Shown here in pieces: positions 6,973 through 64,000 of a DNA stretch of 64,000 nucleotides; position 1 is the stretch's first letter, and each line of letters opens with the position of its first letter. The DNA comes from Macrostomum lignano (taxonomy: Eukaryota). The stretch spans positions 186,001-250,000 of the forward strand of contig NIVC01000240.1 of assembly GCA_002269645.1 (NCBI GenBank), in the 5' to 3' direction. The notes below the pieces were generated by a model. That model had not been told where the DNA came from, did no database searches, and saw only the letters and a list, made by a program, of their open reading frames with translations. The translations under genes and the position numbers were made by a program.

Positions 6973-7252
6973 TTGCCAATTTATCCCACAAGCAACGGGA
7001 TTCGAATGCGCGCTGCCAATCTTCCAATCACCACACTCGCCTCCCCAGCCGGTCATGCCAGCCGGAGCCGCAGCGCGCCATTCGCGGCATCAATAGCGAG
7101 GCTTCCATTGCTGCTGCCAACACCAGCAACAGCCGCAGCCTGGTGTTTACCAACTTTGAAGAAGAACTCGAAGTTCAAGTATAATGCACCGAGTGTACTA
7201 CTGATAGTAGAAACCAGTAACCCCCGGTTTATTGTCAATTTGCAAATTTGCA

Positions 7253-7273
7253 AATAAATAAATAAACAATAAA
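7253..7273 (+). promoter_or_regulatory. Clustered polyadenylation signals (4x AATAAA)
   Basis: AATAAA at 7253, 7257, 7261 and 7268, downstream of the last + strand exon. Confidence 0.5.
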
Positions 7274-7734
7274 GTCCTGCTGCTTTCAGGCTAAACTGGC
7301 AATGTATTGTTGCTGAAGAAACGACTACTTCAAAGTCTAAAAAACAAAACTATTTTGAGCACTGATACGTGAATGTCAATTGAACGGCCTCAAAAAATAG
7401 ATCGGAATTTCCAAGTATTTGAAATAAACTTCTATAAAATATTTCTCGGTTACGTAAAAAAGCTGTTAAAAGAACTCTGCAATTCACATCGATAAAAAAT
7501 GCAAAAAGCTATTAGCAAGTATTCATTGATAAGCACCGCAACACACTACTGACTTAAGTAGAATAAGGCACACTTTTTACAGGCTAGTAAAACTGGGGAA
7601 TCACAGTCTATGAAAAAGTAGGTATAAAAAGCATTTGTACGAGCTGGCAGTACTGGATGGACACAGATGTGCTTACTATGCTACTGAAAGTTATGAGTAG
7701 CTAATAGCCTACCGATCTAATTCCCAATCAGTCA

Positions 7735-8492
7735 CGAACTAGGCCAGTCCCACCCTGTCAGGTCAGGCCAGTCCCACCCTGTCAGATCAGGCCAGTCCCA
7801 CCCTGTCAGATCAGGCCAGTCCCCTGCACTGTCAGATCAGGCCAGTCCCCCAATGTCAGATCAGGCCAGTCCCCCACTGTCAGATCAGGCCAGTCCCCTG
7901 CACTGTCAGATCAGGCCAGTCCGCCACTGTCAGATCAGGCCAGTCCCCTGCACTGTCAGATCAGGCCAGTCCCCCAATGTCAGATCAGGCCAGTCCCCCA
8001 CTGTCAGATCAGGCCAGTCCCCTGCACTGTCAGATCAGGCCAGTCCGCCACTGTCAGATCAGGCCAGTCCCCTGCACTTTCAGATCAGGCCAGTCCCCTG
8101 CACTGTCAGATCAGGCCAGTCCCCCACTGTCAGATCAGGCCAGTCCCCCACTGTCAGATCAGGCCAGTCCCCCACTGTCAGATCAGCCCAGTCCCACCCT
8201 GTCAGATCAGGCCAGTCCCCCACTGTCAGATCAGGCCAGTCCCCCTCTGTCAGATCAGGCCAGTCCCCCACTGTCAGATCAGGCCAGTCCGCCACTGTCA
8301 GATCAGGCCAGTCCCCCAATGTCAGATCAAGCCAGTCCGCCACTGTCAGATCAGGCCAGTCCGCCACTGTCAGATCAGGCCAGTCCGCGACTGTCAGATC
8401 AGGCCAGTCCCCCACTGTCAGATCAGGCCAGTCCCACCCTGTCAGATCAGGCCAGTCCCCCAAAGCCAGATCAGGCCAGTCCCCCACTGTCA
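7735..8492. repeat. 24/25-bp minisatellite (GTCAGATCAGGCCAGTCCCCCACT)n
   Basis: About 31 copies; the last degenerate unit overlaps the 3' end of the minus-strand CDS. Confidence 0.95.
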
Positions 8493-19200: not shown

Positions 19201-22200
19201 GGGGTTGAGAGGGGCAGGGTGGGGTTCAGAGGGGCAGGGTGGGGTTGAGAGGGGCAGGGTGGGGTTGAGAGGGGCCGGGTGGGGTTCAGAGGGGCAGGGT
19301 GGGGTTCAGAGGGGCAGGGTGGGGTTCAGAGGGGCCGGGTGGGGTTCAGAGGGGCAAGGTGGGGTTGAGAGGGGCAAGGTGGGGTTGAGAGGGGCAGGGT
19401 GGGGTTCAGAGGGGCAAGGTGGGGTTGAGAGGGGCAGGGTGGGGTTCAGAGGGGCAGGGTGGGGTTGAGAGGGGCAGGGTGGGGTTCAGAGGGCAAGGTG
19501 GGGTTGAGAGGGGCAGGGTGGGGTTGAGAGGGGCAGTGTGGGGTTGAGAGGGGCAGTGTGGGGTTGAGAGGGGAAGGGTGGGGTTCAGAGGGGCAGGGTG
19601 GGGTTCAGAGGGGCAGGGTGGGGTTCAGAGGGGCAGGGTGGGGTTGAGAGGGGCAGGGTGGGGTTGAGAGAGGCAGGGTGGGGTTCAGAGGGGCAGGGTG
19701 GGGTTGAGAGGGGCAGGGTGGGGTTCAGAGGGGCAGGGTGGGGTTGAGAGGGGCAGGGTGGGGTTGAGAGAGGCAGGGTGGGGTTCAGAGGGGCAGGGTG
19801 GGGTTGAGAGGGGCAGGGTGGGGTTCAGAGGGGCAGGGTGGGGTTGAGAGGGGCAGGGTGGGGTTCAGAGGGGCAGGGTGGGGTTGAGAGGGGCAGGCAA
19901 AATTGGAATTAATTATTTCTGCTTGAAATAAAAAACCAGCTACCAAGTAAGCAAAACAAGCCAATAAAAAGCTGAACACCAGCATACTGGATAAAATTTC
20001 AAAATGGAATAACTAGAACACAGAAGCTCTGGTATAGAATTGAAATTAATAAATAGAATATTGCTGCATAATAAAGCAGCTGATAGTAACTATACAAATT
20101 GGCTTCTGCATAAAAACTTTGGCGGACTTAAAATACAAGCTTGATAATTATGAAAAACTAGCAATATTAATTATTACTATTGCTTGGCCTATGGTGCACA
20201 CTGCTGCCAATGGGATGAGAAGACTCCTCCAGAGAGCGATAGTTGCTGGGCTTCTGAGCTGACATGGCGGCTGCCGATCAGTTTAGATTGAGTATTAATT
20301 GCAGGAATTTTGACTTCAGGCAAAAGTTAATAGAGAGCAATGCTTGCTGCCCGTCTGCTCATGTGCATGCTATATCTAGTAGCTACAGAAACTATAAATA
20401 GAATAGGATTGGAGCCAATCGTTGCCATTGAAAAATCGAAGAGAATTTCGCTATAAACAATCCGGTTGACCAATTTTAATCTGGAGTAATCTAGAGTTTA
20501 TGCAGTTTTAGTTTAAAAAAAGCTACCAGTAGTAGCAGATCCTGAGACAGCTGGATGGATCTGGGAGACGGGAGAGAGACAGGTAGAGAGACTGGTAGAG
20601 AAATACAGGGAAGAGACAGGGGAGAGACAGCTAGAGAGACAGGAAGAGAGACAGATAGAGAGACAGGTAGAGACAGGGGGGAGACAGGGGAGAGACAGGA
20701 AGAGAGACAGGAAGAGAGACAGAGGAGAGAAAGATAGAGAGACAGGAAGAGAGACAGGGGAGAGACAGGAAGAGAGACAGGAAGAGAGACAGAGGAGAGA
20801 AGATAGAGAGACAGGAAGAGAGACAGGGGAGAGACAGATAGAGAGACAGATAGAGAGACAGGAAGAGAGACAGGGGAGAGACAGGTAGAGAGACAGGTAG
20901 AGAGACAGGGGAGAGACAGGGGAGAGACAGATAGAGAGATATAAAGAGAGACAGGAAGAGAGACAGATAGAGAGACAGGGGAGAGACAGGTAGAGAGACA
21001 GGTAGAGAGACAGGGGAGAGACAGGGGAAAGACAGGTAGAGAGACAGATAGAGAGACAGAAAGAGAGACAGGAAGAGAGACAGACAGAGAGACAGGTAGA
21101 GAGACAGGGGAGAGACAGGGGAGAGACAGATAGAAAGACAGGGGAGAGACAGATAGAGAGACAGGAAGAGAGACAGGGGAGAGACAGATAGAGAGACAGG
21201 TAGAGAGACAGGGGAGAGACAGGGGAGAGAGACAGGAAGAGAGACAGAGGAGAGAAGATAGAGAGACAGGAAGAGAGACAGGAAGAGAGACAGAGGAGAG
21301 AAGATAGAGAGACAGGAAGAGAGACAGGGGAGAGACAGATAGAGAGACAGATAGAGAGACAGGAAGAGAGACAGGGGAGAGACAGGTAGAGAGACAGAAA
21401 GAGAGACAGGAAGAGAGACAGGTAGAGAGACAGATAGAGAGACAGATAGAAAGACAGGGGAGAGACAGATAGAGAGACAGGAAGAGAGACAGGGGAGAGA
21501 CAGATAGAGAGACAGATAGAAAGACAGGGGAGAGACAGATAGAGAGACAGGAAGAGAGACAGGGGAGAGACAGATAGAGAGACAGATAGAAAGACAGGGG
21601 AGAGACAGATAGAGAGACAGGAAGAGAGACAGGGGAGAGACAGATAGAGAGACAGATAGAGAGACAGATAGAGAGACAGGAAGAGAGACAGGGGAGAGAC
21701 AGGAAGAGAGACAGGTAGAGAGACAGGTAGAGAGACAGGGAAGAGACTGAGACAGGTGAGCACAGAGAGCCAGTTAAGGAAATCGGCACAGCAACCATAA
21801 ACACGCCCATAGAGTAACAACAATTCTGAGTAAACAAAAAACACCGAAATAAGCAAAGCACAGCCTTCCTCAAATTGATAATTTTCCAAACAGCAAAAGT
21901 CATTACGAGCGTATAAATCAATTAGTTAGAGCCGAGACCTCTGCTCTTGCTGCAAAAAAGAAGAGATTGGCAAAAAACTGGAGAGTGACTACTCCGCATA
22001 AGCAAAGTACATTTTAGTTTTGGCAAACAACACTGCTTCTATGCCGACTCGGCATACTAGTAAAAATGATTTTTACCTACGAGTACTACACAATAAGAAG
22101 GCGGGTCGCACAGCGCGGGTGAGAGCTATTCTCCCTGAGTGCTTTCTTTCTCCCTTCTGTCAAACGGAAGCAAAAATATGTGCAGCTGTTGCCTGAGAGC

Positions 22201-23913
22201 TACAGTTCTGGCTGGCGGAACTAACCGAACGGATTTGTATGCTTTATCTAGCTGCCCCCAGAGCGCTTTGATGAGCTTAATACGCTCGTACTGTGCCAAG
22301 CAGCCAGTCAGCCAAACGCGAATCCTGTTTATAGGCTCAAATTTCCAATCTTGTTTATAGTTTTATTGCCTGGTTTCTGCTTCTTCAGCTGGAACCGCTA
22401 GCTACCCTCCAGACCCTCAGCTGGAACCGCTAGCTACCCTCCAGACCCTCAGCTGGAGCCGCTAGCTACCCTCCAGACCCTCAGCTGGAGCCGCTAGCTA
22501 TCCTCAAGACCCTTAGCTGGAAGCGCTAGCTACCCTCCAGACCCTCAGCGGGGAGCCGCTAGCCACCCTCCAGACTCTCAGCGGGGAGCCGCTAGCCACC
22601 CTCCAGACTCTCAGCGGGGAGCCGCTAGCCACCCTCCAGACTCTCAGCGGGGAGCCGCTAGCTACCCTCCAGACCCTCATGGTAGCCGCTAGCTACCCTC
22701 CAGACCCTCATGGGAGCCGTTAGCTACCCTCCAGACCCTCAGCTGGAGCCGCTAGCTACCCTCCAGACCCTCAGCGGGGAGCCGCTAGCCACCCTCCAGA
22801 CTCTCAGCGGGGAGCCGCTAGCCACCCTCCAGACTCTCAGCGGGGAGCCGCTAGCTACCCTCCAGACCCTCAGCGGGGAGCCGCTAGCCACCCTCCAGAC
22901 CGTCATGGTAGCCGCTAGCTACCCTCCAGACCCTCATGGGAGCCGTTAGCTACCCTCCAGACCCTCAGCTGGAGCCGCTAGCTACCCTCCAGACCCTTAG
23001 CTGGAAGCGCTAGCTACCCTCCAGACCCTTAGCTGGAAGCGCTAGCTACCCTCCAGACCCTTAGCTGGAAGCGCTAGCTACCCTCCAGACCCTCATGGGA
23101 GCCGTTAGCTACCCTCCAGACGCTCAGCTGGAGCCGCTAGCTACCCTCCAGACCTTCAGCTGGAACCGCTAGCTACCCTCCAGACCCTCAGCTGGAACAG
23201 ATAGCTACCCTCCAGACCCTCAGCTGGAGCCGCTAGCGATCCTCCAGACCCTCAGCTGGAACCGCTAGCTACCCTCCAGACCCTCAGCTGGAGCCGCTAG
23301 CTATCCTCCAGACCCTCAGCTAGAGCCGCTAGCTACCCTCCAGACCCTCATGGGAGCCGTTAGCCACCCTCCAGACCCTCAGCTGGAGCCGCTAGCTACC
23401 CTCCAGACCCTTAGCTGGAAGCGCTAGCTACCCTCCAGACCCTCAGCGGGGAGCCGCTAGCCACCCTCCAGACCCTCATGGAAGCCGCTAGCTACCCTCC
23501 AGACCCTCAGCGGGGAGCCGCTAGCTACGCACTACACCAAAGTCTATCCCCATCCGGTAAGTCAGCAACAGCAAAAAAGCAAAATAGCAGGCAGTCTAAT
23601 TGAACCACTAGTTCGCAAAAAAATGGATGAACATTTTGGATAGCAATTCGACACACACTTGGTCGTAAAAATCCTACTCTTGGCTGGCGCTGAAAATCAG
23701 GGTCGGCTGCAATTGATGGTATAGAAATTAATTGGTAGACAATCAATGGCACTATCTAAGAATGAATGTACAAGTAAGACCTTACTGGTAAGAGATACAA
23801 TTTACTGTTAACTCACCGTCCTCAGTAAGTATATCATCAAAACCATATCGAGCAGCAGATGAAGAACTCTGCGGTACTGAGCTGAAAAAGCTGCCGGCAC
23901 CGCTGTCTGTCAT
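13287..23913 (-). CDS. SVOP: SVOP / SV2-related major facilitator superfamily transporter; exons 23913-23817, 20270-20202, 18459-18263, 17401-16916, 16318-16184, 14725-14258, 13607-13287 (590 aa; 556 aa if started at ATG 20265)
   Basis: All GT-AG junctions are phase-compatible. Motifs: YTVEQAVEKLGFGRFQ, ADAMEMLLLSVLGPALRCDWQL, WGAVSDKHGRR, LPESARYL, IDALGRR, EVYPTVVRSVGLGVCSSIARLG, LLPIETRGRAM. The two 5'-most exons are less certain. Confidence 0.92.
13690..14235. repeat. 31-33-bp minisatellite (CAGTTTCCATTCGTCAGGCAGTCACAGACAG)n
   Basis: In the last SVOP intron, ending ~20 nt from the donor at 14257. Confidence 0.95.
14880..16135. repeat. 17-bp-based dimeric (34-bp) minisatellite AACCCTCTCAATTAGGC/AACCCACTTGGTTAGGC
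   Basis: About 74 monomers, with gradual variant drift along the array. Confidence 0.95.
16380..16895. repeat. Two adjacent minisatellites: ~21-bp (AAGGTTATTGGGGAGATTCCC) then ~28-bp (GATGGAGGAGATTGTAGGGATAGTTCTT)
   Basis: They fill the 597-nt SVOP intron almost up to the donor at 16915. Confidence 0.9.
17430..17830. repeat. ~32-36-bp minisatellite with internal CTGTAG-CT-CTACAG inverted repeat
   Basis: About 12 units, ~25 nt from the acceptor at 17402. Confidence 0.9.
18545..19895. repeat. 20-bp G-rich minisatellite (AGGGGCAGGGTGGGGTT(G/C)AG)n
   Basis: About 67 copies, three G-tracts per unit. Confidence 0.97.
20560..21760. repeat. ~12-bp purine-rich repeat (AGAGAGACAGGN)n
   Basis: Read directly; source of ORFs 20491-21921. 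Confidence 0.95.
22385..23525. repeat. 32/33-bp minisatellite (CCTCAGCTGGAGCCGCTAGCTACCCTCCAGAC)n
   Basis: About 35 copies with sub-variants. Confidence 0.95.
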
Positions 23914-24009
23914 GATAGCCCTCAGCGATACTAATTTGATTTGCTAATCTGCAATCTGTCACTGCGTAGTGGGCGCTCAGGAGTAGTGACGGCCTGTCTG
24001 CGGAAGTGA

Positions 24010-25115
24010 TTGAGTACTGTGGGGTATAGATCAAGTACTGTGGGGTATAGATCAAGTACTGTGGGGTATAGATCAAGTACTGTGGGGTATAGATCAAGTA
24101 CTGTGTGGTATAGATCAAGTACTGTGGGGTATAGATCAAGTACTGTGGGGTATAGATCAAGTACTGTGGGGTATAGATCAAGTACTGTGGGGTATAGATC
24201 AAGTACTGTGGGGTATAGATCAAGTACTGTGGGGTATAGATCAAGTAATGTGGGGTATAGATCAAGTAATGTGGGGTATAGATCAAGTAATGTGGGGTAT
24301 AGATCAAGTAATGTGGGGTATAGATCAAGTACTGTGGGGTATAGATCAAGTAATGTGGGGTATAGATCAAGTACTGTGTGGTATAGATCAAGTAATGTGG
24401 GGTATAGATCAAGTACTGTGGGGTATAGATCAAGTAATGTGGGGTATAGATCAAGTACTGTGGGGTATAGATCAAGTAATGTGGGGTATAGATCAAGTAA
24501 TGTGGGGTATAGATCAAGTACTGTGGGTATAGATCAAGTAATGTGGGGTATAGATCAAGTACTGTGGGGTATAGATCAAGTAATGTGGGGTATAGATCAA
24601 GTACTGTGTGGTATAGATCAAGTAATGTGGGGTATAGATCAAGTACTGTGGGGTATAGATCAAGTAATGTGGGGTATAGATCAAGTACTGTGGGGTATAG
24701 ATCAAGTAATGTGGGGTATAGATCAAGTAATGTGGGGTATAGATCAAGTAATGTGGGGTATAGATCAAGTAATGTGGGGTATAGATCAAGTAATGTGGGG
24801 TATAGATCAAGTACTGTGGGGTATAGATCAAGTAATGTGGGGTATAGATCAAGTACTGTGTGGTATAGATCAAGTAATGTGGGGTATAGATCAAGTACTG
24901 TGGGGTATAGATCAAGTAATGTGGGGTATAGATCAAGTACTGTGGGGTATAGATCAAGTAATGTGGGGTATAGATCAAGTAATGTGGGGTATAGATCAAG
25001 TAATGTGGGGTATAGATCAAGTAATGTGGGGTATAGATCAAGTAATGTGGGGTATAGATCAAGTACTGTGGGGTATAGATCAAGTACTGTGTGGTGCAGC
25101 TCAAGTACTGTGGGC
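24010..25115. repeat. 21-bp minisatellite (GTA(C/A)TGTGGGGTATAGATCAA)n
   Basis: About 52 copies, starting ~12 nt from the minus-strand acceptor at 23998. Confidence 0.97.
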
Positions 25116-28738: not shown

Positions 28739-35972
<7,234 letters not shown>

Positions 35973-36344
35973 CAAATCCGACTTGCGTGGCCGAGTAGCA
36001 GTTGTTGAATAAGCGCGCGCTGTACTTAGAGAGAGGCTGGTTGCGAGGCTCACGCGCAGGACAGCGCAGCTGGCATGCTTTTAAACAGGAGTCACTGCTT
36101 CTGCAAGGCGAACGAGAGTAGGGCAGATGGCATGAAATGAAACGGGCCCGAAACAGATATTGGATGAAGACAACAATTGCAGCCACTAAACAAAAAAATC
36201 TCTGAACAAAAAGAGTTTTCGTAGAGAAGAAGATAACTTAATGACAATTTTGAATGGATCGGATGCAATGAATAGAAGGTGATGAATCGGTAAAAGCCAA
36301 AAGAAACAAAAGGCGACAATGCAAAGAATCAATCAACAAGATTG

Positions 36345-52258: not shown

Positions 52259-53563
52259 CAAGGGGTGATCAAAAAGCTCTGCAACCTTTTGTTATAGCTT
52301 TTAGTTATGCATTTGTAGAATTGGCAAAAGCCAAAAATTTACACATATGCGGCTATATCTGTTTGCTATATTTATATGCATTTTGGCTTCCAAATATGCT
52401 CTAGTCAAAGCTCATAGCCATATATTTTCCATGTGTTTTCAGTAGCTGATGGAAACATCAAAAGACAGTTTTCGCTTCTATACCTTTATGTGCATGCAAC
52501 TTGGTTGCAAAGTGACTAAGATTCATACCAATCTGGTGAATATTTTAGCTGACTCTGCTTCATCATTTGACATGGTTGCCTGCTGGCTGCACCATTTCTT
52601 AGAAGGCTGGGACAGCTTCAACGATGAACCAAGGTCTGGCCAACCCTGGACATTTAAGATGTCATGGCCCATGCCAATGCAGGATTGGAGCATTACACTA
52701 AGATTCCTTGCCTATGAGCTTGGTGTCAGCTATGGAAGTGCTCATAACATCATGCATGAGCAACTGGGCCACACAAAGACCTATGCTTGGTGGGTACCCC
52801 ATCTTCTCACTCTGGAGCAGCAAGCAGAGAGGGTGCACATCTGTCACTTGTGGGTGCAAATGTTTGAGCCCAACGGCCCACGATGACTATCAGATGTCAT
52901 CACAGGAGACAAATGTTGGATCTCCTTTTTTACCATGAAGGATAAGCAGTCCAACATAGTCTGGCTTGCAGAAGATGAGCCAAGGCCTGAGGTTCTAAAG
53001 ACCAGATTCTGCAGTTGAAAGCAGATGTTCACCATTGTTTCAACTCTCAGGGTATTGTATTAGTGAACATCCTTCCAGTAGGTGTCACAGTGACTGTCAG
53101 GTTCTAAACAGACAGTTCTGCTACGCATGCTGCAGGAGTGGCAGGAACATGAGCAAACTAGGCATGGACCTCGACTCCTGCTGCACCATGACAATATGGC
53201 ATTACACAGAGCAGCATTAACCATGGTGTACCTGGAGCAGCAGGGGGGTCCGGCTGCTGCCCCATCTACCCTACTCTTTAGACCTAGCACCATGAAACTT
53301 TTGGCTATTCCCAAGGATCAAATCCATCATTTCTAGGAGGCCATTTTCATACATACAAGACCTTGCCTAAGTGGTACATTCAGCTCTATAGGTATACCAA
53401 CTTCAGAGTACCATGACTGCTTTTAGACATGGTGCATATGCATTGCAATGGTGCATATATAGTGGTAGAAAGTACTTTGAGGGAATGTGACATTGATTAG
53501 ATGCCGCGGCTGCTGTAACACTGAGTTGTGAAGTCACTTGCAGAACTTTTTGATCACCCCTCA
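52259..53563 (+). mobile_element. Full-length (1305 bp) decayed mariner DNA transposon
   Basis: TIRs CAAGGGGTGATCAAAAAGCTCTGCAA / TTGCAGAACTTTTTGATCACCCCTCA; TA on both flanks (52257-58, 53564-65). Confidence 0.95.
52449..53430 (+). pseudogene. Mariner transposase pseudogene with stops and frameshifts
   Basis: Motifs FNDEPRSGQP, WVPHLLT, ITGDKCW, LLLHHDNMALH and PYSLDLAP*NFWLFPRIK spread over different frames. Confidence 0.92.
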
Positions 53564-54454: not shown

Positions 54455-55502
54455 TAAATCATGCCTGTAAATATTGTATCTCTTGCCAATTTGTGGCCAT
54501 TGGCTGACCTCTATGACCTTGAGATCAGTCACCACAATCTGGTGCTATTAACAGTTGATGTTAATAGTTGAATTAACTATGCATTGGCTATAAGCAACTA
54601 ATCATCTAATAGCCAACTCATAGAATTGCAGCCACTGTCAGGAAGCTCTAGCTATGTAGTTTTAATGTCAGGGTGGAGCTGACTATAATGATAGATACAC
54701 CTGGTCTTGTCCTATCTTTTAAGACCTAAGACATGTTTTAAATCTTAATAAACTTGCTTTAATTTGTTTCTTTCAAATTTTAGGTTAAAATTTAATGTGG
54801 GAAACTAGGACATTGCCAAATAAACATAGGCCTACTATAACTGTACTGTATATTAATAAATCTTATAACTAGTATAGCCACTATAGTAGGCTATATTATA
54901 ACTTGTATATATGCCAATGGTCATTAAATTCTATTATAATTATAAGTTCTACTGAACTTTCATTACTATTGTTATTAGTATTTTTATATTTAATTAGTCC
55001 CATCCACATTTCCTTTGAGTTGTGAGTCTTGTGACTAGACATGACTCTTCTTTTAGCCCACCTGCCCTTGAGCCTTGGACTTGGTTGATATTTACTCCCT
55101 TTAGTTTTGCCAACTCACTCTTCCTTCTGTCATCTTTTTCTCTTAATTTTCAGTGGAAAAGCCACTTTCTCTGGTTTTTAGTTGGACTATCCTTTCTTTA
55201 AAAGGAAAGGTCTCAATTACATTTTTGACGAGTGGACAAATATGTTGCTAAGCATGCTAATACCTGCAACAATCGACAAGGAAGAAAAAGTATTAAATTG
55301 AGGATGTTAAATTAAATACAGAGTTGAGCTGATGCAGGGATTCCCCGAGCGATATTCAAGATCGATTTTCGGAAATAACAAAAATCTTTGCTTTTAAAGC
55401 ACCAAACGCTATGATTTTTTACAGAAAAAACATCACCCACGAGATAAACCGACTTGAAAAAAATTACGGCTACAGATAGAAAGGATTTTTTACAATTTGC
55501 AA

Positions 55503-56181
55503 AAAACTGATGTTCCTATCTCCGCAATGTATTAGATTGATATTCGATTTCGAGTACTTCTGCTTGCTCTCTGTCGCTGAAAATTGACATGCAGGACTTC
55601 ACCCAGACACTAAGCGATTATCATAACTCAAACCGAACTCAAAGCTTCATGCTCGAGAACTATTCGAGAAAAACTGATGTTCCTATCTCCGCAATGTATT
55701 AGATTGATATTCGATTTCGAGTACTTCTGCTTGCTCTCTGTCGCTGAAAATTGACATGCAGGACTTCACCCAGACACTAAGCGATTATCATAACTCAAAC
55801 CGAACTCAAAGCTTCATGCTCGAGAACTATTCGAGAAAAACTGATGTTCCTATCTCCGCAATGTATTAGATTGATATTCGATTTCGAGTACTTCTGCTTG
55901 CTCTCTGTCGCTGAAAATTGACATGCAGGACTTCACCCAGACACTAAGCGATTATCATAACTCAAACCGAACTCAAAGCTTCATACTCGAGAACTATTCG
56001 AGAAAAACTGATGTTCCTATCTCCGCAATGTATTAGATTGATATTCGATTTCGAGTACTTCTGCTTGCTCTCTGTCGCTGAAAATTGACATGCAGGACTT
56101 CACCCAGACACTAAGCGATTATCATAACTCAAACCGAACTCAAAGCTTCATGCTCGAGAACTATTCGAGAAAAACTGATGT
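55503..56181 (+). repeat. 167-bp tandem subrepeat, left arm (~4 copies)
   Basis: Anchor CTGATGTT at 55507, 55674, 55841, 56008 and 56175. Confidence 0.97.
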
Positions 56182-56687
56182 TTCTACATGTACATGTACA
56201 TGTATCTCCACAGTGCATTAGATTGGGATAATAATTTTGTTCATTTGTGTGAATATATAGTAAGATGTTTGCATGCATGATGTACATATATTGGCTGATT
56301 TACAATAATTTTTTAAAGATTCTCTACTAGTAAACACTGACTCATTGGGTTCAATCAGTTTAATTGATTTCATTAAGCCATGCAGCACTATTAAACTTTT
56401 TCGCGTTGTGTACACTGACCTGCCTACTTGGACTGTTCGTACAGTTTCAGCCGTGCAATCAAACATCGGTACACCCGTATTTTCTGCGCTGAAATACTTT
56501 TTGCACTGCACATTTGACTGATATATTTCTTCGGACAGGGCTGGATACAATTTTGCGTCAAATTGGACCCACTCAAAATCACTCTGTAGCTACTGATTTT
56601 GAAAATAAGCTTTGAAGAAAATTTGCTGCGTCTAATTATTAGTTTCACGAATTGTTTCAGGAATAGTTTCACGTTCACGAATGACAG

Positions 56688-58356
56688 GCTTCTTTGTTAG
56701 GTCATTTCTCTTCTTTGTATGTTGCTTACTGTTGGCTCAAAGTATTCCGCCAAAAGATGAGGTAAGCCACTTTTTGTCCCTGTGTCACATCTTAATCTTT
56801 GTGGCATAGTAGCCATTTGTAAATTTTATTTCATAGCTACGAAATGCCTCGAAATTTGGACGATTTACAGATCGATAGCGTTGTGACTGATGGAATAAAA
56901 AAGTTTGCAACGCCTCGTAGTTTTAAAGCTTCGGCTCCCATCTTCTGCTACATCGCAGAACGACTAAATTTGAGGAATACCATACGCAATCGAGCCATGA
57001 TGTTCCACTGGATTCGCAAAAGAACAAAAGAAAAAAATGAATTGGCCGGATTGACTGGAACTTTCTCTGAGGGCCGCATTCCTTTGATTAGTACTCCCCC
57101 TAGACCTTCTGAGGGTCACCCTCCTCCGGTTAGCACTCCCCCTAGACCTTCTGAGGGTCACCCTCCTCCGGTTAGCACTCCCCCTAGACCTTCTGAGGGT
57201 CACCCTCCTCCGGTTAGCACTCCCCCTAGACCTTCTGAGGGTCACCCCCTCCGGTTAGCACTCCCCCTAGACCTTCTGAGGGTCACCCTCCTCCGGTTAG
57301 CACTCCCCCTAGACCTTCTGAGGGTCACCCTCCTCCGGTTAGCACTCCCCCTAGACCTTCTGAGGGTCACCCTCCTCCGGTTAGCACTCCCCCTAGACCT
57401 TCTGAGGGTCACCCTCCTCCGGTTAGCACTCCCCCTAGACCTTCTGAGGGTCACCCTCCTCCGGTTAGCACTCCCCCTAGACCTTCTGAGGGTCACCTTC
57501 TGAGGGTGAGTTAAGCACGCAAGAAAATCTATTTAGCTATGTAATTTGATTTTGACGTTTCCCGAATTATTTCATTTTTAGGAAGTCCGTTTGATTTTGG
57601 TTCCCATGTTTACTGGAAGCCATTTTTACCTGGTAGCGATTAACGTATCAGCTAGAAATGTTTACCTCTTCGACTCCTCTACCAGTAATATCCGCCAGCA
57701 GAATGTGTTGCCCAGAATTGTAGAAAACTGGAAGTAAGAAGCTTTTCCTTTCAACCTTTGACTTCAGATAAGACAATTATGAATGTAAGGATACACATCC
57801 ATGTAAGCTTTTCCGAACACCAATTGTAGTGCTTTTCTACGTCTGGCACCAAAAGAAATCTACGAGTATTTTTCACTCAAAGAAAATACTACTTTTCGCA
57901 GTGGCAGCGCTCCACACACTAAGCAAGACGATTCTTTTAGTTGTGGTGCCTTCGTCTGCTTGTATGCCAGAAGCATAATTCTTGGTAGGGAGCTACAATA
58001 TCAGAAAGCAAGCAAAGACTTTCTTGAGAAAGTGCGTTGTTACATATGGAAAGTAATCAGTAACAACTCCGTCGATAGCAACCAAGGTTCTTGTGCAATT
58101 TGTCAAGCAGAAGAGCCGCCAAAAGCAGACGGTGCAGCAACAATTGATTGGGTGAGTTGTAAAATTCTTGTATGTATAAACACCTCTGTGCCAAATATCC
58201 ATACACATGTACTCACTTTACCTTTACTTCTTGTACATGCACTACTGGTAGATTGAGTGCTCATTCTGTCTTGACTGGATCCACTGCGTCTGTGCATCCA
58301 CAACGCAAGAAGAGGAAAACTTCTGCTGCTCGACCTGCATCAATTTACTCAGCTGA
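56688..58356 (+). CDS. Ulp1/SENP-family (C48) cysteine protease fused to a C-terminal PHD finger, 5'-partial; exons 56688-56761, 56837-57505 (1-nt deletion at ~57247), 57582-57733, 57830-58151, 58252-58356
   Basis: RNLDDLQIDSVV...FHWIRKRT; LILVPMFTGSHFYLVAIN...VYLFDS (His 57621, Asp 57672); KQDDSFSCGAFV (Gln 57924, Cys 57942, Qx5C). PHD: CAIC...IDW|IECSFCLDWIHCVC...FCCSTC (C4HC3). All introns are GT-AG and phase-compatible once the single missing base is restored. Confidence 0.85.
57066..57505 (+). repeat. 42-bp minisatellite inside the Ulp1 exon, encoding (EGHPPPVSTPPRPS)n
   Basis: About 10 units; one unit at ~57241 is 41 bp. Confidence 0.95.
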
Positions 58357-58500
58357 TCGATTACCATACAAGTCAATGGCCTAACTTTGTGCAGCATTAA
58401 ATATGCATGACTATTAGACTATAGTCTAATGATTTAATTAAATGATAAGATTAAAGAGCTAATTGAGTTTCATCTAAATTATAATTTATTCAGTGCAAAT

Positions 58501-61127
58501 AAACGCTTAGTGTCTGGGTGAAGTCCTGCATGCCAATTTTCAGCGACAGAGAGCAAGCAGAAGTACTCGAAATCGAATATCAATCTAATACATTGTGGAG
58601 ATAGGAACATCAGTTTTTCTCGAATAGTTCTCGAGCATGAAGCTTTGAGTTCGGTTTGAGTTATGATAATCGCTTAGTGTCTGGGTGAAGTCCTGCATGC
58701 CAATTTTCAGCGACAGAGAGCAAGCAGAAGTACTCGAAATCGAATATCAATCTAATACATTGCGGAGATAGGAACATCAGTTTTTCTCGAATAGTTCTCG
58801 AGCATGAAGCTTTGAGTTCGGTTTGAGTTATGATAATCGCTTAGTGTCTGGGTGAAGTCCTGCATGTCAATTTTCAGCGACAGAGAGCAAGCAGAAGTAC
58901 TCGAAATCGAATATCAATCTAATGCATTGCGGAGATAGGAACATCAGTTTTTCTCGAATAGTTCTCGAGCATGAAGCTTTGAGTTCGGTTTGAGTTATGA
59001 TAATCGCTTAGTGTCTGGGTGAAGTCCTGCATGTCAATTTTCAGCGACAGAGAGCAAGCAGAAGTACTCGAAATCGAATATCAATCTAATACATTGCGGA
59101 GATAGGAACATCAGTTTTTCTCGAATAGTTCTCGAGCATGAAGCTTTGAGTTCGGTTTGAGTTATGATAATCGCTTAGTGTCTGGGTGAAGTCCTGCATG
59201 CCAATTTTCAGCGACAGAGAGCAAGCAGAAGTACTCGAAATCGAATATCAATCTAATACATTGTGGAGATAGGAACATCAGTTTTTCTCGAATAGTTCTC
59301 GAGCATGAAGCTTTGAGTTCGGTTTGAGTTATGATAATCGCTTAGTGTCTGGGTGAAGTCCTGCATGCCAATTTTCAGCGACAGAGAGCAAGCAGAAGTA
59401 CTCGAAATCGAATATCAATCTAATACATTGCGGAGATAGGAACATCAGTTTTTCTCGAATAGTTCTCGAGCATGAAGCTTTGAGTTCGGTTTGAGTTATG
59501 ATAATCGCTTAGTGTCTGGGTGAAGTCCTGCATGTCAATTTTCAGCGACAGAGAGCAAGCAGAAGTACTCGAAATCGAATATCAATCTAATGCATTGCGG
59601 AGATAGGAACATCAGTTTTTCTCGAATAGTTCTCGAGCATGAAGCTTTGAGTTCGGTTTGAGTTATGATAATCGCTTAGTGTCTGGGTGAAGTCCTGCAT
59701 GTCAATTTTCAGCGACAGAGAGCAAGCAGAAGTACTCGAAATCGAATATCAATCTAATACATTGCGGAGATAGGAACATCAGTTTTTCTCGAATAGTTCT
59801 CGAGCATGAAGCTTTGAGTTCGGTTTGAGTTATGATAATCGCTTAGTGTCTGGGTGAAGTCCTGCATGTCAATTTTCAGCGACAGAGAGCAAGCAGAAGT
59901 ACTCGAAATCGAATATCAATCTAATACATTGCGGAGATAGGAACATCAGTTTTTCTCGAATAGTTCTCGAGCATGAAGCTTTGAGTTCGGTTTGAGTTAT
60001 GATAATCGCTTAGTGTCTGGGTGAAGTCCTGCATGCCAATTTTCAGCGACAGAGAGCAAGCAGAAGTACTCGAAATCGAATATCAATCTAATGCATTGTG
60101 GAGATAGGAACATCAGTTTTTCTCGAATAGTTCTCGAGCATGAAGCTTTGAGTTCGGTTTGAGTTATGATAATCGCTTAGTGTCTGGGTGAAGTCCTGCA
60201 TGTCAATTTTCAGCGACAGAGAGCAAGCAGAAGTACTCGAAATCGAATATCAATCTAATACATTGCGGAGATAGGAACATCAGTTTTTCTCGAATAGTTC
60301 TCGAGCATGAAGCTTTGAGTTCGGTTTGAGTTATGATAAACGCTTAGTGTCTGGGTGAAGTCCTGCATGTCAATTTTCAGCGACAGAGAGCAAGCAGAAG
60401 TACTCGAAATCGAATATCAATCTAATACATTGCGGAGATAGGAACATCAGTTTTTCTCGAATAGTTCTCGAGCATGAAGCTTTGAGTTCGGTTTGAGTTA
60501 TGATAATCGCTTAGTGTCTGGGTGAAGTCCTGCATGTCAATTTTCAGCGACAGAGAGCAAGCAGAAGTACTCGAAATCGAATATCAATCTAATACATTGC
60601 GGAGATAGGAACATCAGTTTTTCTCGAATAGTTCTCGAGCATGAAGCTTTGAGTTCGGTTTGAGTTATGATAATCGCTTAGTGTCTGGGTGAAGTCCTGC
60701 ATGCCAATTTTCAGCGACAGAGAGCAAGCAGAAGTACTCGAAATCGAATATCAATCTAATGCATTGTGGAGATAGGAACATCAGTTTTTCTCGAATAGTT
60801 CTCGAGCATGAAGCTTTGAGTTCGGTTTGAGTTATGATAATCGCTTAGTGTCTGGGTGAAGTCCTGCATGTCAATTTTCAGCGACAGAGAGCAAGCAGAA
60901 GTACTCGAAATCGAATATCAATCTAATACATTGCGGAGATAGGAACATCAGTTTTTCTCGAATAGTTCTCGAGCATGAAGCTTTGAGTTCGGTTTGAGTT
61001 ATGATAATCGCTTAGTGTCTGGGTGAAGTCCTGCATGTCAATTTTCAGCGACAGAGAGCAAGCAGAAGTACTCGAAATCGAATATCAATCTAATACATTG
61101 CGGAGATAGGAACATCAGTTTTTTGCA
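58501..61127 (-). repeat. 167-bp tandem subrepeat, right arm (~16 copies, inverted relative to left arm)
   Basis: Reverse complement of the left-arm unit; SNP pattern of units 1-4 recurs in units 5-8. Confidence 0.97.
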
Positions 61128-61915
61128 AATTGTAAAAAATCCTTTCTATCTGTGGCCGTAATTTTTTTCAAGTCGGTTTATCTCGTGGGTGATGTTTTTT
61201 CTGTAAAAAATCATAGCGTTTGGTGCTTTAAAAGCAAAGATTTTTGTTATTTCCGAAAATCGATCTTGAATATCGCTCGGGGAATCCCTGCATGTTGAGC
61301 TGAGTTGCATGATCGTGCGAGCTCGCTTTTTATTTTCGCTGGAATTTAAAAAATCGTAGCATATGAGCACGCAAAGAAACAAAAAGTGTACTTGTTAGCA
61401 TTTAAAATACCAAAATGGTGTCAGATATCACAGCCGTATGGGGTGTCAAGGGAAGGTGTCAGTCGATATCACAGCCATATAGGGTGTCAGGGAAAGAGGG
61501 TTCTGCACGATGGTGGCAATGCAGGCAGAGGAGAGACATAGAGAAGGGGGCGCTTTCAAACGTTATTCTAGTTTTATTATTGTTCTCCGCTACAGAAATT
61601 TTAAGTCGTTTTTTGGTCCAAAATTCCATCAATTCGATATAACTATTAGATTTGTTGTTATCATTAAAACTGTAAGACAACCAACCAATCCTCGTTAAGT
61701 TTATTGCCATTTCGTCGGGTGCTCCCCTTTAAGGGGATCGAATGTCAACTTAAGCACCAGAATGGAGCCCGAAGTTCAGCTCCGGACCAAAACGACTGCA
61801 ATCGATAACTTGTCGCTCCAGACGACTAGAATCGCCGAGACATCTCATCCCAGGCCCTGACTTGGGGTCCCAGGGGATATAGGGGATAAAATGGGGATTT
61901 TGTGTCAACCAAGTC

Positions 61916-62606
61916 CATCGAGAGCTGCTTTCGTCTTCTGACGGAGATGCAACAGCGGTCTGCAACAGTCACTCCACTGTTAACGGCAGTTCGGTTGCAA
62001 CATCCAGATTCATTTCAAAAAATCAGCGCCATTGCGTCAACGAATTTGTTCAAACGCTTCTAATACATCTGGAATTTCTGTTATCAGATAGTTTCACAGA
62101 ATTTTCACTCATTCAAACTTGTCGGGATTGCCAGCGCACAAGTTCTGAAGTTCCTGTTGGCACAATCAAAATAAACAGAGTGATTTGCATTCCTCTCTGT
62201 CGGTTTGAGCGCTGAATTGTCAGTTTAGACAAAATATTCTGCGCTTTTGCCGCTCCTCAGGTATAGTGAAATGTTCGGATGCCAATTGCCTTGGCGATTG
62301 TAATCAAGAGATCGCAGTAACACCTGGAAAGTTTACCCTGATTTATCTTGACCGTGCTAGTATGGATGGCATCCTAACTCTTCAAACTCCTGTAAGCTTT
62401 TCCTCAAGGTAAGGGGTGTTTCTACACTTGGTAAGCCAGTGGCCACAATATCACACCATGGAAACCGACTGAAGTCGGGACATTTCACAGCAAGCGTACT
62501 GAGCTGTGTGTGGACGAGAATTGACGACATGAAAGTTACGTCAGACTATAACCCCTTCGTACGTGAGCTTGAGTGCATCGTGCTCGTTGCACTTTTAAAC
62601 TCGTAA
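61916..62606 (+). pseudogene. Ubiquitin-specific protease (USP/C19) domain fragment lacking the Cys box, at least 2 frameshifts
   Basis: Collinear motifs NQRHCVNEFVQTLLIHL (Gln-box-like), QTCRDCQRTSSE, KCSDANC...PGKFTLIYLDR...TPVSF and His box VATISHHGNRLKSGHFTAS...WTRIDDMKV (His 62481, Asp 62523/62526). Confidence 0.8.
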
Positions 62607-63194
62607 AAGCATTTTTAGCGAAAATGCAATTGTTTTAAACGAGTGTACTGTACGTTTTGTATTGCAGATTTTAAGGGACATGCAGATTAAGAAAAAATGT
62701 CATCTCACGCATTCTTTACGTACCATAGGTTACATGTGAAGATAATTCAGACTGTCATCAAATATCAAAAGCTTTGCATTAGTTCTTTCAATTTCTTTCA
62801 GACTCACAATTAGCTAAAAATTCGCAGCATTTTTTACTGCAGCAAAGAACTTAAACCCAAAAACATTTTTTAGGACTAAGAAACTTTTGCAATTATGATT
62901 TTACTGAGCTATGCGTAAGAGGCGTGACTTCATTTGCTTAAAAACGTTTGCTGCTTTGCATGACATGCTTTATTTTACCAATATACATGGCTTCGGTTTA
63001 TCGTCCAAAAATTCTGCTTACTAATAACCAAATTAATTTACCAATTAATTTTTTCAAAGTGAGTTTTAAGATCGGCGTTTTTAACATTGTTTCGATACGA
63101 GCAAATCATTTCTATTACTTAACAAACAATATACAATAGCTGAAATGAACTACACCCGCAAATGCGAGATTCGAATTGAATGGAGCTTCGTCAC

Positions 63195-63794
63195 TTAAAG
63201 CTGGATGGGATGTCTCGGCGATTCTAGTCGACTGGGCCGACAAGTTATCGATTGCAGTCGGTTTGGTCCGGAGCTGAACTTCGGGCTCCATTCCAGAGCC
63301 TTAAGTTGACATGAGATCCCCATTTTATCCCCTTTATCCCCTGGGACCCCAAGGAAGGGAGCCGGATGGGATGTCTCGGCGATTCTAGTCGTCTGGGCCG
63401 ACAAGTTATCGATTGCAGTCGGTTTGGTCCGGAGCTGAACTTCGGGCTCCATTCCAGAGCCTTAAGTTGACATGAGATCCCCATTTTATCCCCTTTATCC
63501 CCTGGGACCCCAAGGAAGGGAGCCGGATGGGATGTCTCGGCGATTCTAGTCGTCTGGGCCGACAAGTTATCGATTGCAGTCGGTTTGGTCCGGAGCTGAA
63601 CTTCGGGCTCCATTCCAGAGCCTTAAGTTGACATGAGATCCCCATTTTATCCCCTTTATCCCCTGGGACCCCAAGGAAGGGAGCCGGATGGGATGTCTCG
63701 GCGATTCTAGTCGTCTGGGCCGACAAGTTATCGATTGCAGTCGGTTTGGTCCGGAGCTGAACTTCGGGCTCCATTCTGGTGCTTAAGTTGACAT
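63195..63794 (-). repeat. 161-bp tandem subrepeat, right arm of element 2 (~3.7 copies)
   Basis: Identical ORF starts at 63452, 63613 and 63774 (161-bp spacing); one diverged inverted copy at 61742-61915. Confidence 0.97.
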
Positions 63795-64000
63795 CCCCTT
63801 TATTCGTGCAACAAACGAAGGATACACTAAACGAGAATGAAGGGTGAATGATGATTTATTAACATTAACAGTCAAACGGAATTTCTGTCTATGGTTTAAT
63901 TGTCGATAAAAATACGTTTATAATTATTGATCGATGCTAATTTCTTCTCACTTTTTTCAGTGTTTTGTCCTAATTTCGATTTTAAAACTTGCTGGATATT

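What the first reader, a model, noticed from the sequence alone, without database searches (positions are those of the whole stretch)
55332..63799. Two neighbouring, unrelated foldback transposons share one design: satellite-built arms plus a Ub/SUMO-protease cargo
Seen: two elements 438 bp apart with unrelated terminal sequences. Both have inverted arms made of ~160-170-bp tandem units, both have the 3' arm (relative to cargo) expanded, both have + strand cargo, and neither shows a recognisable transposase. One cargo is a Ulp1-type deSUMOylase + PHD finger, the other a USP-type deubiquitinase domain. Established: SUMO and ubiquitin marks participate in transposon silencing, and plant Mutator elements (Kaonashi) carry Ulp1 genes. 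Inference: these animal elements may repeatedly capture deconjugating proteases as anti-silencing factors, with the arm repeats as binding platforms. I know no description of this paired architecture but cannot search the literature.
Basis: partly seen in the sequence, partly recalled or inferred. Interest (0 to 1): 0.8.

Follow-up and report, generated by a model that had tools for sequence, protein, structure and literature searches.

The report
Two adjacent foldback transposons, one carrying SUMO-protease
Two unrelated "foldback" jumping genes sit side by side; the younger one carries a SUMO-protease/PHD-finger gene that is also found between inverted repeat arrays in oysters, so the gene looks like a long-standing passenger of this kind of element, but both the architecture and the protease theme are already described in the literature.

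Summary
The structures are real. E1 (55332-61293) is a young foldback DNA transposon. It has a perfect 9-bp target-site duplication and 99% identical arms. Each arm is a 160-bp terminal domain plus 167-bp units (4.1 copies left, 15.7 right). Its 2.3-kb middle holds a four-exon gene for a SENP-like Ulp1 (C48) protease with a C-terminal PHD finger. That reading frame is broken once, by a 1-nt deletion in a coding minisatellite.

E2 (about 61742-63794) is an older, unrelated foldback built from 161-bp units. Its "USP domain" is only a sub-threshold His-box remnant.

Neither element encodes a transposase.

The Ulp1-PHD gene is not a random host fragment. Homologues occur in Macrostomum and in oysters. 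In two oyster species the gene also lies between inverted tandem arrays and evolves under purifying selection (dN/dS about 0.16).

Foldback elements with satellite arms are published (FB, Tetris, Rehavkus, Muta1). So are Ulp1(+PHD), OTU and C19 domains in animal DNA transposons. The adjacency, shared strand and "3' arm expansion" look coincidental.

Verdict: new member of a known kind. Repeated capture of proteases and an anti-silencing role remain untested.

The parts
55323..55331 (.). E1 target-site duplication, left copy (GTTGAGCTG)
   Evidence: identical 9-mer immediately outside both termini
55332..55491 (+). E1 left terminal (flanking) domain, 160 bp, non-repeated, starts ATGCAGGGATTCCCC
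   Evidence: 159/160 identical to the reverse complement of 61134-61293
55492..56186 (+). E1 left arm array, 167-bp units x 4.1
56187..58498 (+). E1 middle domain (2312 bp) holding the Ulp1-PHD gene; no transposase
56844..57505 (+). Gene exon A: ATG, N-terminal region, then a coding minisatellite; GT donor at 57506
   Evidence: collinear BLASTP with oyster P0011 from residue 51 once the minisatellite is removed
57088..57497 (+). Coding minisatellite, 42 bp x 9.8 (STPPRPSEGHPPPV); period divisible by 3
57214..57254 (+). 41-bp repeat copy (1-nt deletion). This is the only frame break between the ATG and the stop
   Evidence: copy starts spaced 42, 42, 42, 41, 42...; frame 0 switches to frame 2
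57582..57733 (+). Gene exon B: catalytic His (GSHFYL) and Asp (LFDSS) of the C48 protease
57902..58151 (+). Gene exon C: catalytic Gln/Cys (KQDDSFSCG), RCYIWKVISNN linker, first half of the PHD finger
58252..58356 (+). Gene exon D: second half of the PHD finger and the stop codon. The intron position is shared with relative L001
58499..61133 (-). E1 right arm array, 167-bp units x 15.7 (inverted)
61134..61293 (-). E1 right terminal domain (inverted copy of 55332-55491)
61294..61302 (.). E1 target-site duplication, right copy (GTTGAGCTG)
61742..61909 (+). E2 left arm, one 161-168-bp unit, starts ATGTCAACTTAAGCACC
61910..63198 (+). E2 middle domain (1289 bp) with collinear USP-like motifs in three different frames; no Cys box
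62397..62606 (+). USP-like His-box open frame (…ISHHGNRLKSGHFTASV…WTRIDDMKV…)
   Evidence: Pfam UCH 19.2 bits, E 0.001, below the cut-off of 23.9
63199..63794 (-). E2 right arm, 161-bp units x 3.7 (inverted); inner units 100% identical to each other
61597..61736 (.). Possible degenerate outer inverted domain of E2 (partner 63795-63925); uncertain
   Evidence: local score 55 against shuffled 34 +/- 5 (maximum 53)

Best explanation
E1 is a recently inserted, non-autonomous foldback DNA transposon. Each arm has a 160-bp terminal domain followed by a variable number of 167-bp tandem units.

Mobilisation (inferred). It is moved in trans by a cut-and-paste DDE transposase encoded elsewhere. The most likely type is Mutator/Rehavkus, because the insertion made a 9-bp target-site duplication and because foldback arms with subterminal tandem repeats are typical of that group. 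The transposase would bind the terminal domain and possibly the units. Unit number would drift by unequal exchange or replication slippage, which would explain the unequal arms.

The gene (shown). The middle domain carries a stand-alone four-exon gene for a SENP-like cysteine protease with intact His, Asp, Gln and Cys residues. The protease is fused to a C-terminal PHD finger.

Its history (shown). This is an old gene family tied to this kind of element, not a freshly captured host fragment. Homologues with the same linker and PHD finger exist in a flatworm and in oysters. In oysters the gene also lies between inverted tandem arrays and is under purifying selection.

Its role (inferred). The protein is probably brought to chromatin by its PHD finger and removes SUMO or a related modifier there. 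This would help the element, either by countering SUMO-dependent silencing or by easing transposition or repair. In this particular copy the frame is broken by a 1-nt deletion in a coding minisatellite.

E2 is an older, unrelated foldback element. Its interior keeps only a decayed USP-like remnant, which could be a captured gene fragment or a dead accessory gene.

The adjacency, shared orientation and longer downstream arm of the two elements are coincidental.
For: Structure and recent transposition of E1:
- Arms are 99% complementary.
- Terminal domains are 159/160 identical and units are 98-100% identical.
- There is a perfect 9-bp TSD.

The gene:
- All splice sites are canonical GT-AG and there is a single frame break.
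- Pfam Peptidase_C48 scores 30-32 bits, above the cut-off.
- The family profile hits SENP1/SENP2 at E 4e-8. It also hits PHD fingers of PHF23, KDM5A/B, PHF13 and BPTF at E 3e-5 to 1e-3.
- Catalytic Q, D, C and G and all eight zinc ligands are invariant in the alignment.

A family tied to this architecture:
- Relatives are P0001 (58% identity, same intron in the PHD finger), Macrostomum lignano P0003, and oyster LOC144622971, LOC128182153 and LOC105320504.
- In C. virginica (L002) and M. angulata (L003) the gene sits between inverted arrays of 31-bp units.
- No transposase ORF lies inside the oyster element L002.
- The two oyster loci are collinear.

Selection:
- Oyster pair: dN/dS 0.16 over 199 codons.
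- E1 against L001: pN 0.355 and pS 0.82.
- Coding arrays have periods of 42, 144 and 189 bp, all divisible by 3. Arm arrays have periods of 167, 161 and 31 bp, which are not.

Literature:
- Rehavkus: 9-bp TSD, long TIRs with tandem repeats, PHD finger (PMC6446971; bioRxiv 10.1101/2024.12.02.626372).
- Aedes Muta families: 8-9-bp TSD, subterminal repeats, and non-autonomous derivatives with varying repeat number and foreign interiors (PMC5225508).
- Tetris: a flanking domain plus 220-bp repeats, 8-10-bp TSD, no transposase (PMC4079207).
- Ulp1(+PHD) in Ginger1 and Mutator elements of hydra and lancelet (PMC2836005).
Against: - No transposase or autonomous partner was seen, so the superfamily rests on TSD length and architecture alone.
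- The 9-bp TSD could also be read as 10 bp.
- The 167-bp units show no similarity to the terminal domain. Nothing therefore shows that they bind a transposase.
- The window is 38% tandem repeat overall, so array growth may simply reflect this genome's habits.
- The E1 copy of the gene is frameshifted.
- The oyster genes may be single-copy conserved loci, that is domesticated genes rather than mobile elements. No TSD could be found there. A KDZ transposase gene lies next to the right arm in both species.
- No copy number or expression data exist for the source genome. Its proteins are absent from the collections.
Confidence: 0.6

Rival explanations
1. First reader's model. Unrelated foldback families independently and repeatedly capture deconjugating proteases (Ulp1 in E1, USP in E2) as anti-silencing cargo, and the arm repeats act as binding platforms.
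For: - Two different protease folds are hinted at in two unrelated neighbouring elements.
- Ulp1, OTU and C19 domains recur in Ginger1, Mutator, Helitron and IS5-like elements (PMC2836005).
- L005 shows a Ulp1-like protein next to a PIF1 helicase.
- L004 shows a distant Ulp1 gene inside a 13-kb long-TIR element.
- Fungal DNA transposons of 11 lineages independently carry TET/JBP enzymes thought to counter silencing (PMC12730594).
Against: - E2's USP signal is sub-threshold (18-19 bits). It lacks the Cys box, is split over three frames, and has no detectable relatives.
- E1's gene is ancient and is inherited together with the architecture, not newly captured.
- Arm polarity is not conserved in oysters.
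- No functional data exist.
Confidence: 0.15
2. The Ulp1-PHD reading frame is the C-terminal remnant of a transposase-Ulp1-PHD fusion protein of the Mutator/Rehavkus or Ginger1 type. E1 would then be an internal-deletion derivative that lost the DDE part.
For: - Ginger1 and some Mutator transposases carry C-terminal Ulp1 and PHD domains (PMC2836005).
- Rehavkus transposases carry a PHD finger and a minisatellite (PMC6446971).
- Pfam matches only profile positions 78-192 of 217 of the C48 model.
Against: - All detectable relatives are stand-alone proteins of 150-560 aa with no transposase domain.
- E1's gene has its own ATG. Its exon A aligns collinearly with the oyster proteins upstream of the catalytic His.
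- Pfam also matches only profile positions 84-209 in the full-length oyster proteins, so the partial match reflects divergence, not truncation.
- A Ginger1 origin conflicts with the 9-bp TSD, because Ginger1 makes 4-bp duplications.
Confidence: 0.12
3. The Ulp1-PHD gene is, or is becoming, a host gene derived from a foldback element. The inverted arrays would be relics, and E1 would be a duplicated gene copy rather than an active transposon.
For: - Each oyster species appears to have one annotated locus.
- The oyster genes show strong purifying selection.
- The same KDZ neighbour is present in both species.
- No TSD is detectable in the oyster loci.
Against: - E1 has a perfect TSD exactly at its termini and near-identical arms, which marks recent transposition.
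- The left-hand neighbours of the two oyster loci differ.
- The E1 copy is frameshifted, which is unexpected for an essential host gene.
Confidence: 0.1
4. Assembly artefact: a foldback chimera or collapsed/expanded repeat that mimics inverted arms.
For: - The arrays are nearly identical and long.
- The single 1-nt deletion in a C/T-rich repeat could be a sequencing error.
Against: - There is a unique middle domain with a spliced, conserved gene.
- Unique 160-bp terminal domains are flanked by a perfect 9-bp TSD.
- The same architecture occurs in two independent oyster assemblies.
Confidence: 0.02

Closest known systems
Tetris foldback transposon of Drosophila virilis (PMC4079207)
   Same: Both have long inverted arms made of an outer non-repeated flanking domain followed by a variable number of satellite-size tandem units (about 220 bp in Tetris, 167 bp in E1). 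Both have unequal arms, 8-10-bp TSDs, no transposase, and a presumed mobilisation in trans.
   Different: The middle domain of Tetris has no coding capacity, whereas E1 carries a conserved spliced gene. The sequences are unrelated.
Rehavkus (Mutator-related) foldback DNA transposons (PMC6446971; bioRxiv 10.1101/2024.12.02.626372)
   Same: Both have a 9-bp TSD, long TIRs holding tandem satellite repeats with 2-50 or more copies, a PHD finger in the encoded protein, and an internal minisatellite.
   Different: Rehavkus encodes a DDE transposase that carries the PHD finger. E1 has no DDE domain, and its PHD finger is fused to a C48 protease. Homology to a Rehavkus protein could not be tested.
Muta1 and other Aedes aegypti MULEs and their non-autonomous derivatives (PMC5225508)
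   Same: Both are animal elements with 8-9-bp TSDs and foldback-type TIRs with subterminal tandem repeats. Both families have derivatives with variable repeat number and heterogeneous interiors, including host gene fragments.
   Different: Muta repeats are 9-15 bp, not about 165 bp. No Ulp1 gene is reported in them.
Kaonashi (KI-MULE) and other plant MULEs with ULP1-like genes (cited in PMC2836005 as Hoen et al. 2006 and van Leeuwen et al. 2007)
   Same: Both are Mutator-type elements that carry a Ulp1-like protease gene rather than, or besides, a transposase.
   Different: These are plant elements with ordinary TIRs and no PHD fusion, as far as I recall. No homology test was done here.
Ginger1 elements (for example Ginger1-9_HM) and MuDR elements of hydra and lancelet with Ulp1 +/- PHD; Helitrons with OTU (PMC2836005)
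   Same: All are animal DNA transposons that encode Ulp1 and PHD domains. The published hypothesis is that ubiquitin/SUMO deconjugation assists transposition.
   Different: In those elements the domains are C-terminal parts of the transposase. Ginger1 makes 4-bp TSDs and has short TIRs without satellite arrays.
Fungal DNA transposons carrying TET/JBP dioxygenases (PMC12730594)
   Same: This is a precedent for a chromatin-modifying accessory enzyme travelling in many unrelated DNA-transposon lineages, presumably to escape silencing.
   Different: The enzyme, kingdom and element architecture all differ.

Membership tests
Foldback (FB-like) DNA transposons (structural class) | Long terminal inverted arms built largely of tandem sub-repeats, often unequal in length | tested here: met
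   E1 arms are 855 and 2795 bp with 167-bp units. E2 arms are 168 and 596 bp with 161-bp units.
Foldback (FB-like) DNA transposons (structural class) | Target-site duplication at the outer ends of the arms | tested here: met
   E1 has a perfect 9-bp GTTGAGCTG. E2 is ambiguous: a candidate TCCCCTTTA at 61723-61731 and 63794-63802 is confounded with unit-like sequence.
Mutator / Rehavkus superfamily | TSD of 8-11 bp (typically 9) | tested here: met
   E1 has 9 bp, which could also be read as 10. The expected lengths are taken from PMC6446971 and PMC5225508.
Mutator / Rehavkus superfamily | MULE/Rehavkus DDE transposase encoded by the element or by a partner with the same termini | tested here: not met
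   No transposase domain is present in any ORF of E1 or E2. A partner elsewhere in the genome cannot be searched with these tools.
Mutator / Rehavkus superfamily | Rehavkus-type PHD finger homologous to that of Rehavkus transposases | not testable with these tools
   A C4HC3 PHD finger is present, but no Rehavkus protein sequence was available for comparison.
Ulp1/SENP (peptidase C48) proteases | C48 catalytic domain above the Pfam cut-off with His, Asp, Gln and Cys in order | tested here: met
   The domain scores 30.5-32 bits against a cut-off of 20.7. The SENP1 alignment covers H, D, Q and C, and these residues are invariant in the family.
USP/UCH (peptidase C19) deubiquitinases (E2) | UCH domain above the Pfam cut-off with both a Cys box and a His box | tested here: not met
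   Only the His box matches, at 18.2-19.2 bits against a cut-off of 23.9. There is no Cys box, and the concatenated translation finds nothing.
Ginger1 | 4-bp TSD and a Gypsy-integrase-like transposase | tested here: not met
   E1 has a 9-bp TSD and no integrase domain. The Ginger1 features are taken from PMC2836005.
KDZ (Kyakuja/Dileera/Zisupton) | 7-8-bp TSD and a KDZ transposase | tested here: not met
   E1's TSD is 9 bp, and no KDZ-like sequence is present in the window. KDZ genes do neighbour the oyster loci. TSD lengths are taken from PMC12730594.

The most novel reading that the evidence does not exclude
A cross-phylum lineage of foldback transposons (the source animal, flatworms, oysters) whose only conserved gene is a chromatin-targeted SUMO protease (Ulp1-PHD) rather than a transposase. 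Such elements would borrow a transposase in trans but carry their own effector against SUMO-dependent silencing, kept under purifying selection. This would be the animal counterpart of plant Kaonashi/VANDAL-type anti-silencing cargo.
Probability: 0.2. Interest if true: 0.65.

Novelty: new member of a known kind. Interest (0 to 1): 0.35.

Why it matters
If the Ulp1-PHD gene really serves the element, E1 and its oyster and flatworm relatives would give a tractable animal system. SUMO is central to transposon silencing in animals, and these elements could be used to ask whether transposons fight SUMO-dependent chromatin silencing with their own deSUMOylase.

They also give another clear example of satellite-size repeats being carried and amplified inside transposon arms, which is one proposed route for the birth of satellite DNA.

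As it stands, the finding mainly adds a well-preserved, recently moved example to families of features that are already described.

Tried and rejected
- A word-indexed homologue search with the spliced Ulp1-PHD protein found nothing. Exon C alone then worked.
- A profile search with alignment A2 added only a few short hits. A metagenome locus scan found none.
- For E2, the concatenated translation gave no Pfam, PDB or homologue hit.
- Exact look-ups of nine window ORFs showed that the source genome is not in the collections. Copy number and the identity of the organism could not be obtained.
- Similarity between the E1 and E2 arms, and between E1's terminal domain and its units, was rejected. 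Scores equal shuffled controls.
- KDZ as E1's transposase was rejected. There is no KDZ sequence in the window and the TSD length does not fit (PMC12730594).
- A TSD search in the oyster loci gave nothing in L002 and one doubtful 9-mer in L003 that overlaps a repeat unit.
- No Rfam family matches in 54-64 kb.
- No other inverted arrays occur among the 28 upstream minisatellites.
- The literature searches 'foldback + Ulp1 + transposon' and 'Zisupton + Ulp1' returned no papers.

Full report
**What is there: E1**

Tandem Repeats Finder and the repeat finder confirm two neighbouring foldback structures.

- E1 spans 55332-61293. Its outer 855 nt are 99% complementary between the two ends.
- Each arm is a 160-bp non-repeated terminal domain followed by 167-bp units.
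  - The terminal domains are 159/160 identical between the ends.
  - The units number 4.1 on the left (55502-56186) and 15.7 on the right (58499-61123).
  - Units are 98-100% identical to one another.
- The element is bracketed by a perfect 9-bp direct repeat, GTTGAGCTG, at 55323-55331 and 61294-61302.
- Identical 9-mers at two fixed positions are expected with a probability of about 4e-6. This is a target-site duplication, and E1 is a bona fide, recently transposed element.

**What is there: E2**

- E2 has one unit on the left (61742-61909) and 3.7 units of 161 bp on the right (63199-63794).
- The arms are only 90-92% complementary, while the inner right-hand units are 100% identical to each other.
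- Its termini are blurred.
  - The two outermost units share variants that the inner units lack.
  - Weak inverted similarity continues about 140 bp further out, with a score of 55 against 34 +/- 5 for shuffles.
  - A candidate 9-bp duplication, TCCCCTTTA, is confounded with unit-like sequence.
- E1 and E2 arms are unrelated. Local alignment scores equal shuffled controls in both orientations.
- The gap between the elements is 448 bp.

**Coding content of E1**

The 2.3-kb middle domain holds one plus-strand gene with canonical GT-AG introns.

- Exon A is 56844-57505, exon B 57582-57733, exon C 57902-58151, and exon D 58252-58356.
- The translation of exons B-D matches Pfam Peptidase_C48 above the curated cut-off, at 30.5-32 bits against 20.7.
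- It ends in a C4HC3 PHD finger.
- A profile of the family hits SENP1 and SENP2 at E about 4e-8 across the catalytic His, Asp, Gln and Cys.
- The same profile separately hits solved PHD fingers (PHF23, KDM5A/B, PHF13, BPTF) at E 3e-5 to 1e-3.
- The catalytic residues and all eight zinc ligands are invariant in the alignment.
- Exon A contains a 42-bp coding minisatellite of 9.8 copies, encoding STPPRPSEGHPPPV.
- One copy of it (57214-57254) is 41 bp long. This is the only frame break between the ATG and the stop. It may be a very recent mutation or a sequencing error.
- With the minisatellite removed, the protein aligns collinearly with an oyster relative from residue 51 through the PHD finger (E 5e-17). 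This suggests that the minisatellite sits in a loop of an otherwise complete protease.

**Coding content of E2**

- Three collinear USP-like motifs can be read by eye, in three different frames.
- Only the His-box frame gives a Pfam UCH match, at 18.2-19.2 bits against a cut-off of 23.9.
- There is no Cys box.
- The concatenated translation finds nothing in Pfam, the PDB or the protein collection.
- I therefore regard "USP domain" as a plausible but decayed and unproven remnant.
- No ORF of either element matches a transposase family. No Rfam family matches the region.

**Relatives**

An exhaustive HMMER search with exon C found a small family.

- The nearest relative is a contig from a sequencing run, at 58% identity. 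It has the same intron inside the PHD finger.
- Other members are proteins of the flatworm Macrostomum lignano and uncharacterised proteins of Crassostrea virginica, Magallana angulata and M. gigas.
- All share the protease, a characteristic RCxIWKTIxNN linker and the terminal PHD finger.
- None has a transposase domain.

**The oyster loci**

This is the key result. In both oyster genomes available, the gene lies between inverted arrays of 31-bp tandem units.

- In L002 the arrays are 6290-7710 and 23131-24086. In L003 they are 8077-9461 and 19056-22101.
- No transposase ORF lies inside the oyster element L002.
- The two loci are collinear through non-coding parts.
- The oyster proteins also carry in-frame coding tandem repeats, with periods of 144 and 189 bp.
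- Coding arrays in all three genes have periods divisible by three. The arm arrays (167, 161 and 31 bp) do not.

**Selection**

- Between the two oyster genes, dN/dS is 0.16 over 199 codons.
- Between E1 and its nearest relative, synonymous sites are saturated (pS 0.82) while pN is 0.355.

So the architecture "inverted tandem arrays plus a Ulp1-PHD gene" is conserved across phyla, and the gene is constrained. It is not a random host fragment. In E1 it was not newly captured.

**What it most likely is**

- The anatomy (a flanking domain, satellite-size repeats, unequal arms, a middle domain, an 8-10-bp TSD and no transposase) is that of published foldback transposons such as Tetris (PMC4079207).
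- Most foldback elements are attributed to the Mutator superfamily (same paper).
- Rehavkus elements combine 9-bp TSDs, long TIRs with satellite repeats, a minisatellite and a PHD finger (PMC6446971; bioRxiv 10.1101/2024.12.02.626372).
- Aedes Muta families have 8-9-bp TSDs, subterminal repeats, and non-autonomous derivatives with variable repeat number and foreign interiors (PMC5225508).
- Ulp1 with or without PHD, OTU and C19 domains in animal DNA transposons, and the idea that deconjugation assists transposition, were published in 2010 (PMC2836005).
- I therefore read E1 as a non-autonomous foldback element, probably mobilised by a Mutator/Rehavkus-type transposase.
  - The 9-bp TSD is shown.
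  - The superfamily is inferred.
- E1 carries an accessory SENP-like protease targeted to chromatin by a PHD finger.
  - The domains are shown.
  - The activity, and any benefit to the element, are inferred.
- KDZ and Ginger1 are excluded for E1 by TSD length and by the absence of their genes (PMC12730594; PMC2836005).

**What does not hold**

- The "shared design" beyond the generic foldback plan is weak.
  - The second protease is unproven.
  - Arm polarity is not conserved, because in oyster L002 the 5' arm is the longer one.
  - Same-strand orientation of two elements has even odds.
- The window as a whole is 38% tandem repeat, with 28 unrelated minisatellite arrays in the first 50 kb. Array expansion is thus a general habit of this genome.
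- Nothing shows that the 167-bp units bind a transposase. They share no motif with the terminal domain.

**Open points**

- The oyster genes may be single-copy conserved loci, that is domesticated genes. Alternatively they may be parts of a larger composite element, since a KDZ/CxC4 transposase gene lies just outside the right arm in both species. No TSD could be found there.
- The source genome is not in the searchable collections. Copy number, an autonomous partner, polymorphism and expression could not be examined.
- The organism is a metazoan. The window contains an HMG-box TCF/LEF-like exon and an MFS transporter exon. Its nearest Ulp1-PHD relatives are spiralian, but it was not identified.

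**Verdict**

  - There is a constrained, element-linked SUMO-protease gene.
  - There is no evidence for repeated capture or for a special paired design.
- The case falls within known kinds (foldback or Mutator-like elements; protease-bearing DNA transposons).
- The one moderately new point is the cross-phylum link between stand-alone Ulp1-PHD genes and foldback arms.

Noticed in passing
window 1-50123: Tandem-repeat density is extraordinary. There are 28 distinct minisatellite arrays, with periods of 11-47 bp and lengths of 0.2-1.5 kb. Each has its own unit and there is no dispersed homology between them. Together they cover about 40% of the first 50 kb, and tandem repeats cover 38% of the whole window. 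The arrays lie between and beside exons of host genes.
   Followed up: partly
window 28739-30268 (-), 35223-36053 (-), 14192-17389 (-): Host genes are present. One is an HMG-box (TCF/LEF-like) exon with long poly-Ala/Gln tracts (Pfam HMG_box, 76 bits). Another is a set of MFS transporter exons (MFS_1, 80 bits). The segment 1-2500 is 66% GC and holds a 699-aa Ala/Arg-rich ORF with no Pfam match.
   Followed up: partly
window 52449-52886 (+): This is a mariner-like transposase fragment. The only match is a weak one to the Mos1 HTH_48 domain (15.6 bits). It is a third transposon remnant just upstream of E1.
   Followed up: partly
L002 26022-27252 and L003 23420-28013: In both oyster species a KDZ/CxC4 transposase gene sits just outside the right inverted array of the Ulp1-PHD locus, on the opposite strand. 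Its exons are 86-89% identical between species. This could mean a composite element or conserved synteny, and it is unresolved.
   Followed up: partly
L004 317-13341 (Actinia tenebrosa): This is a 13-kb element with 1.4-kb terminal inverted repeats at 97-99% identity. It holds a distant Ulp1 gene next to the right repeat and a 570-aa gene with no Pfam match. There are no tandem arrays.
   Followed up: partly
L005 749-5305: A protein with two Ulp1-like domains lies directly downstream of a PIF1-type helicase gene on a 5.6-kb contig. This looks like a Helitron-type element with a cysteine protease.
   Followed up: no
L002 9347-9747, 13299-13830, 17774-18647: Three arrays of a 156-bp oyster satellite-like repeat are inserted in and around the Ulp1-PHD gene of C. 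virginica. Their ORFs are repetitive.
   Followed up: no
window 56755-56843: There may be a tiny upstream exon. An ATGAG followed by GTAAGC, and an acceptor just before 56838, would add MSYE in frame ahead of the annotated ATG of the E1 gene. This was read from the sequence and was not tested.
   Followed up: no
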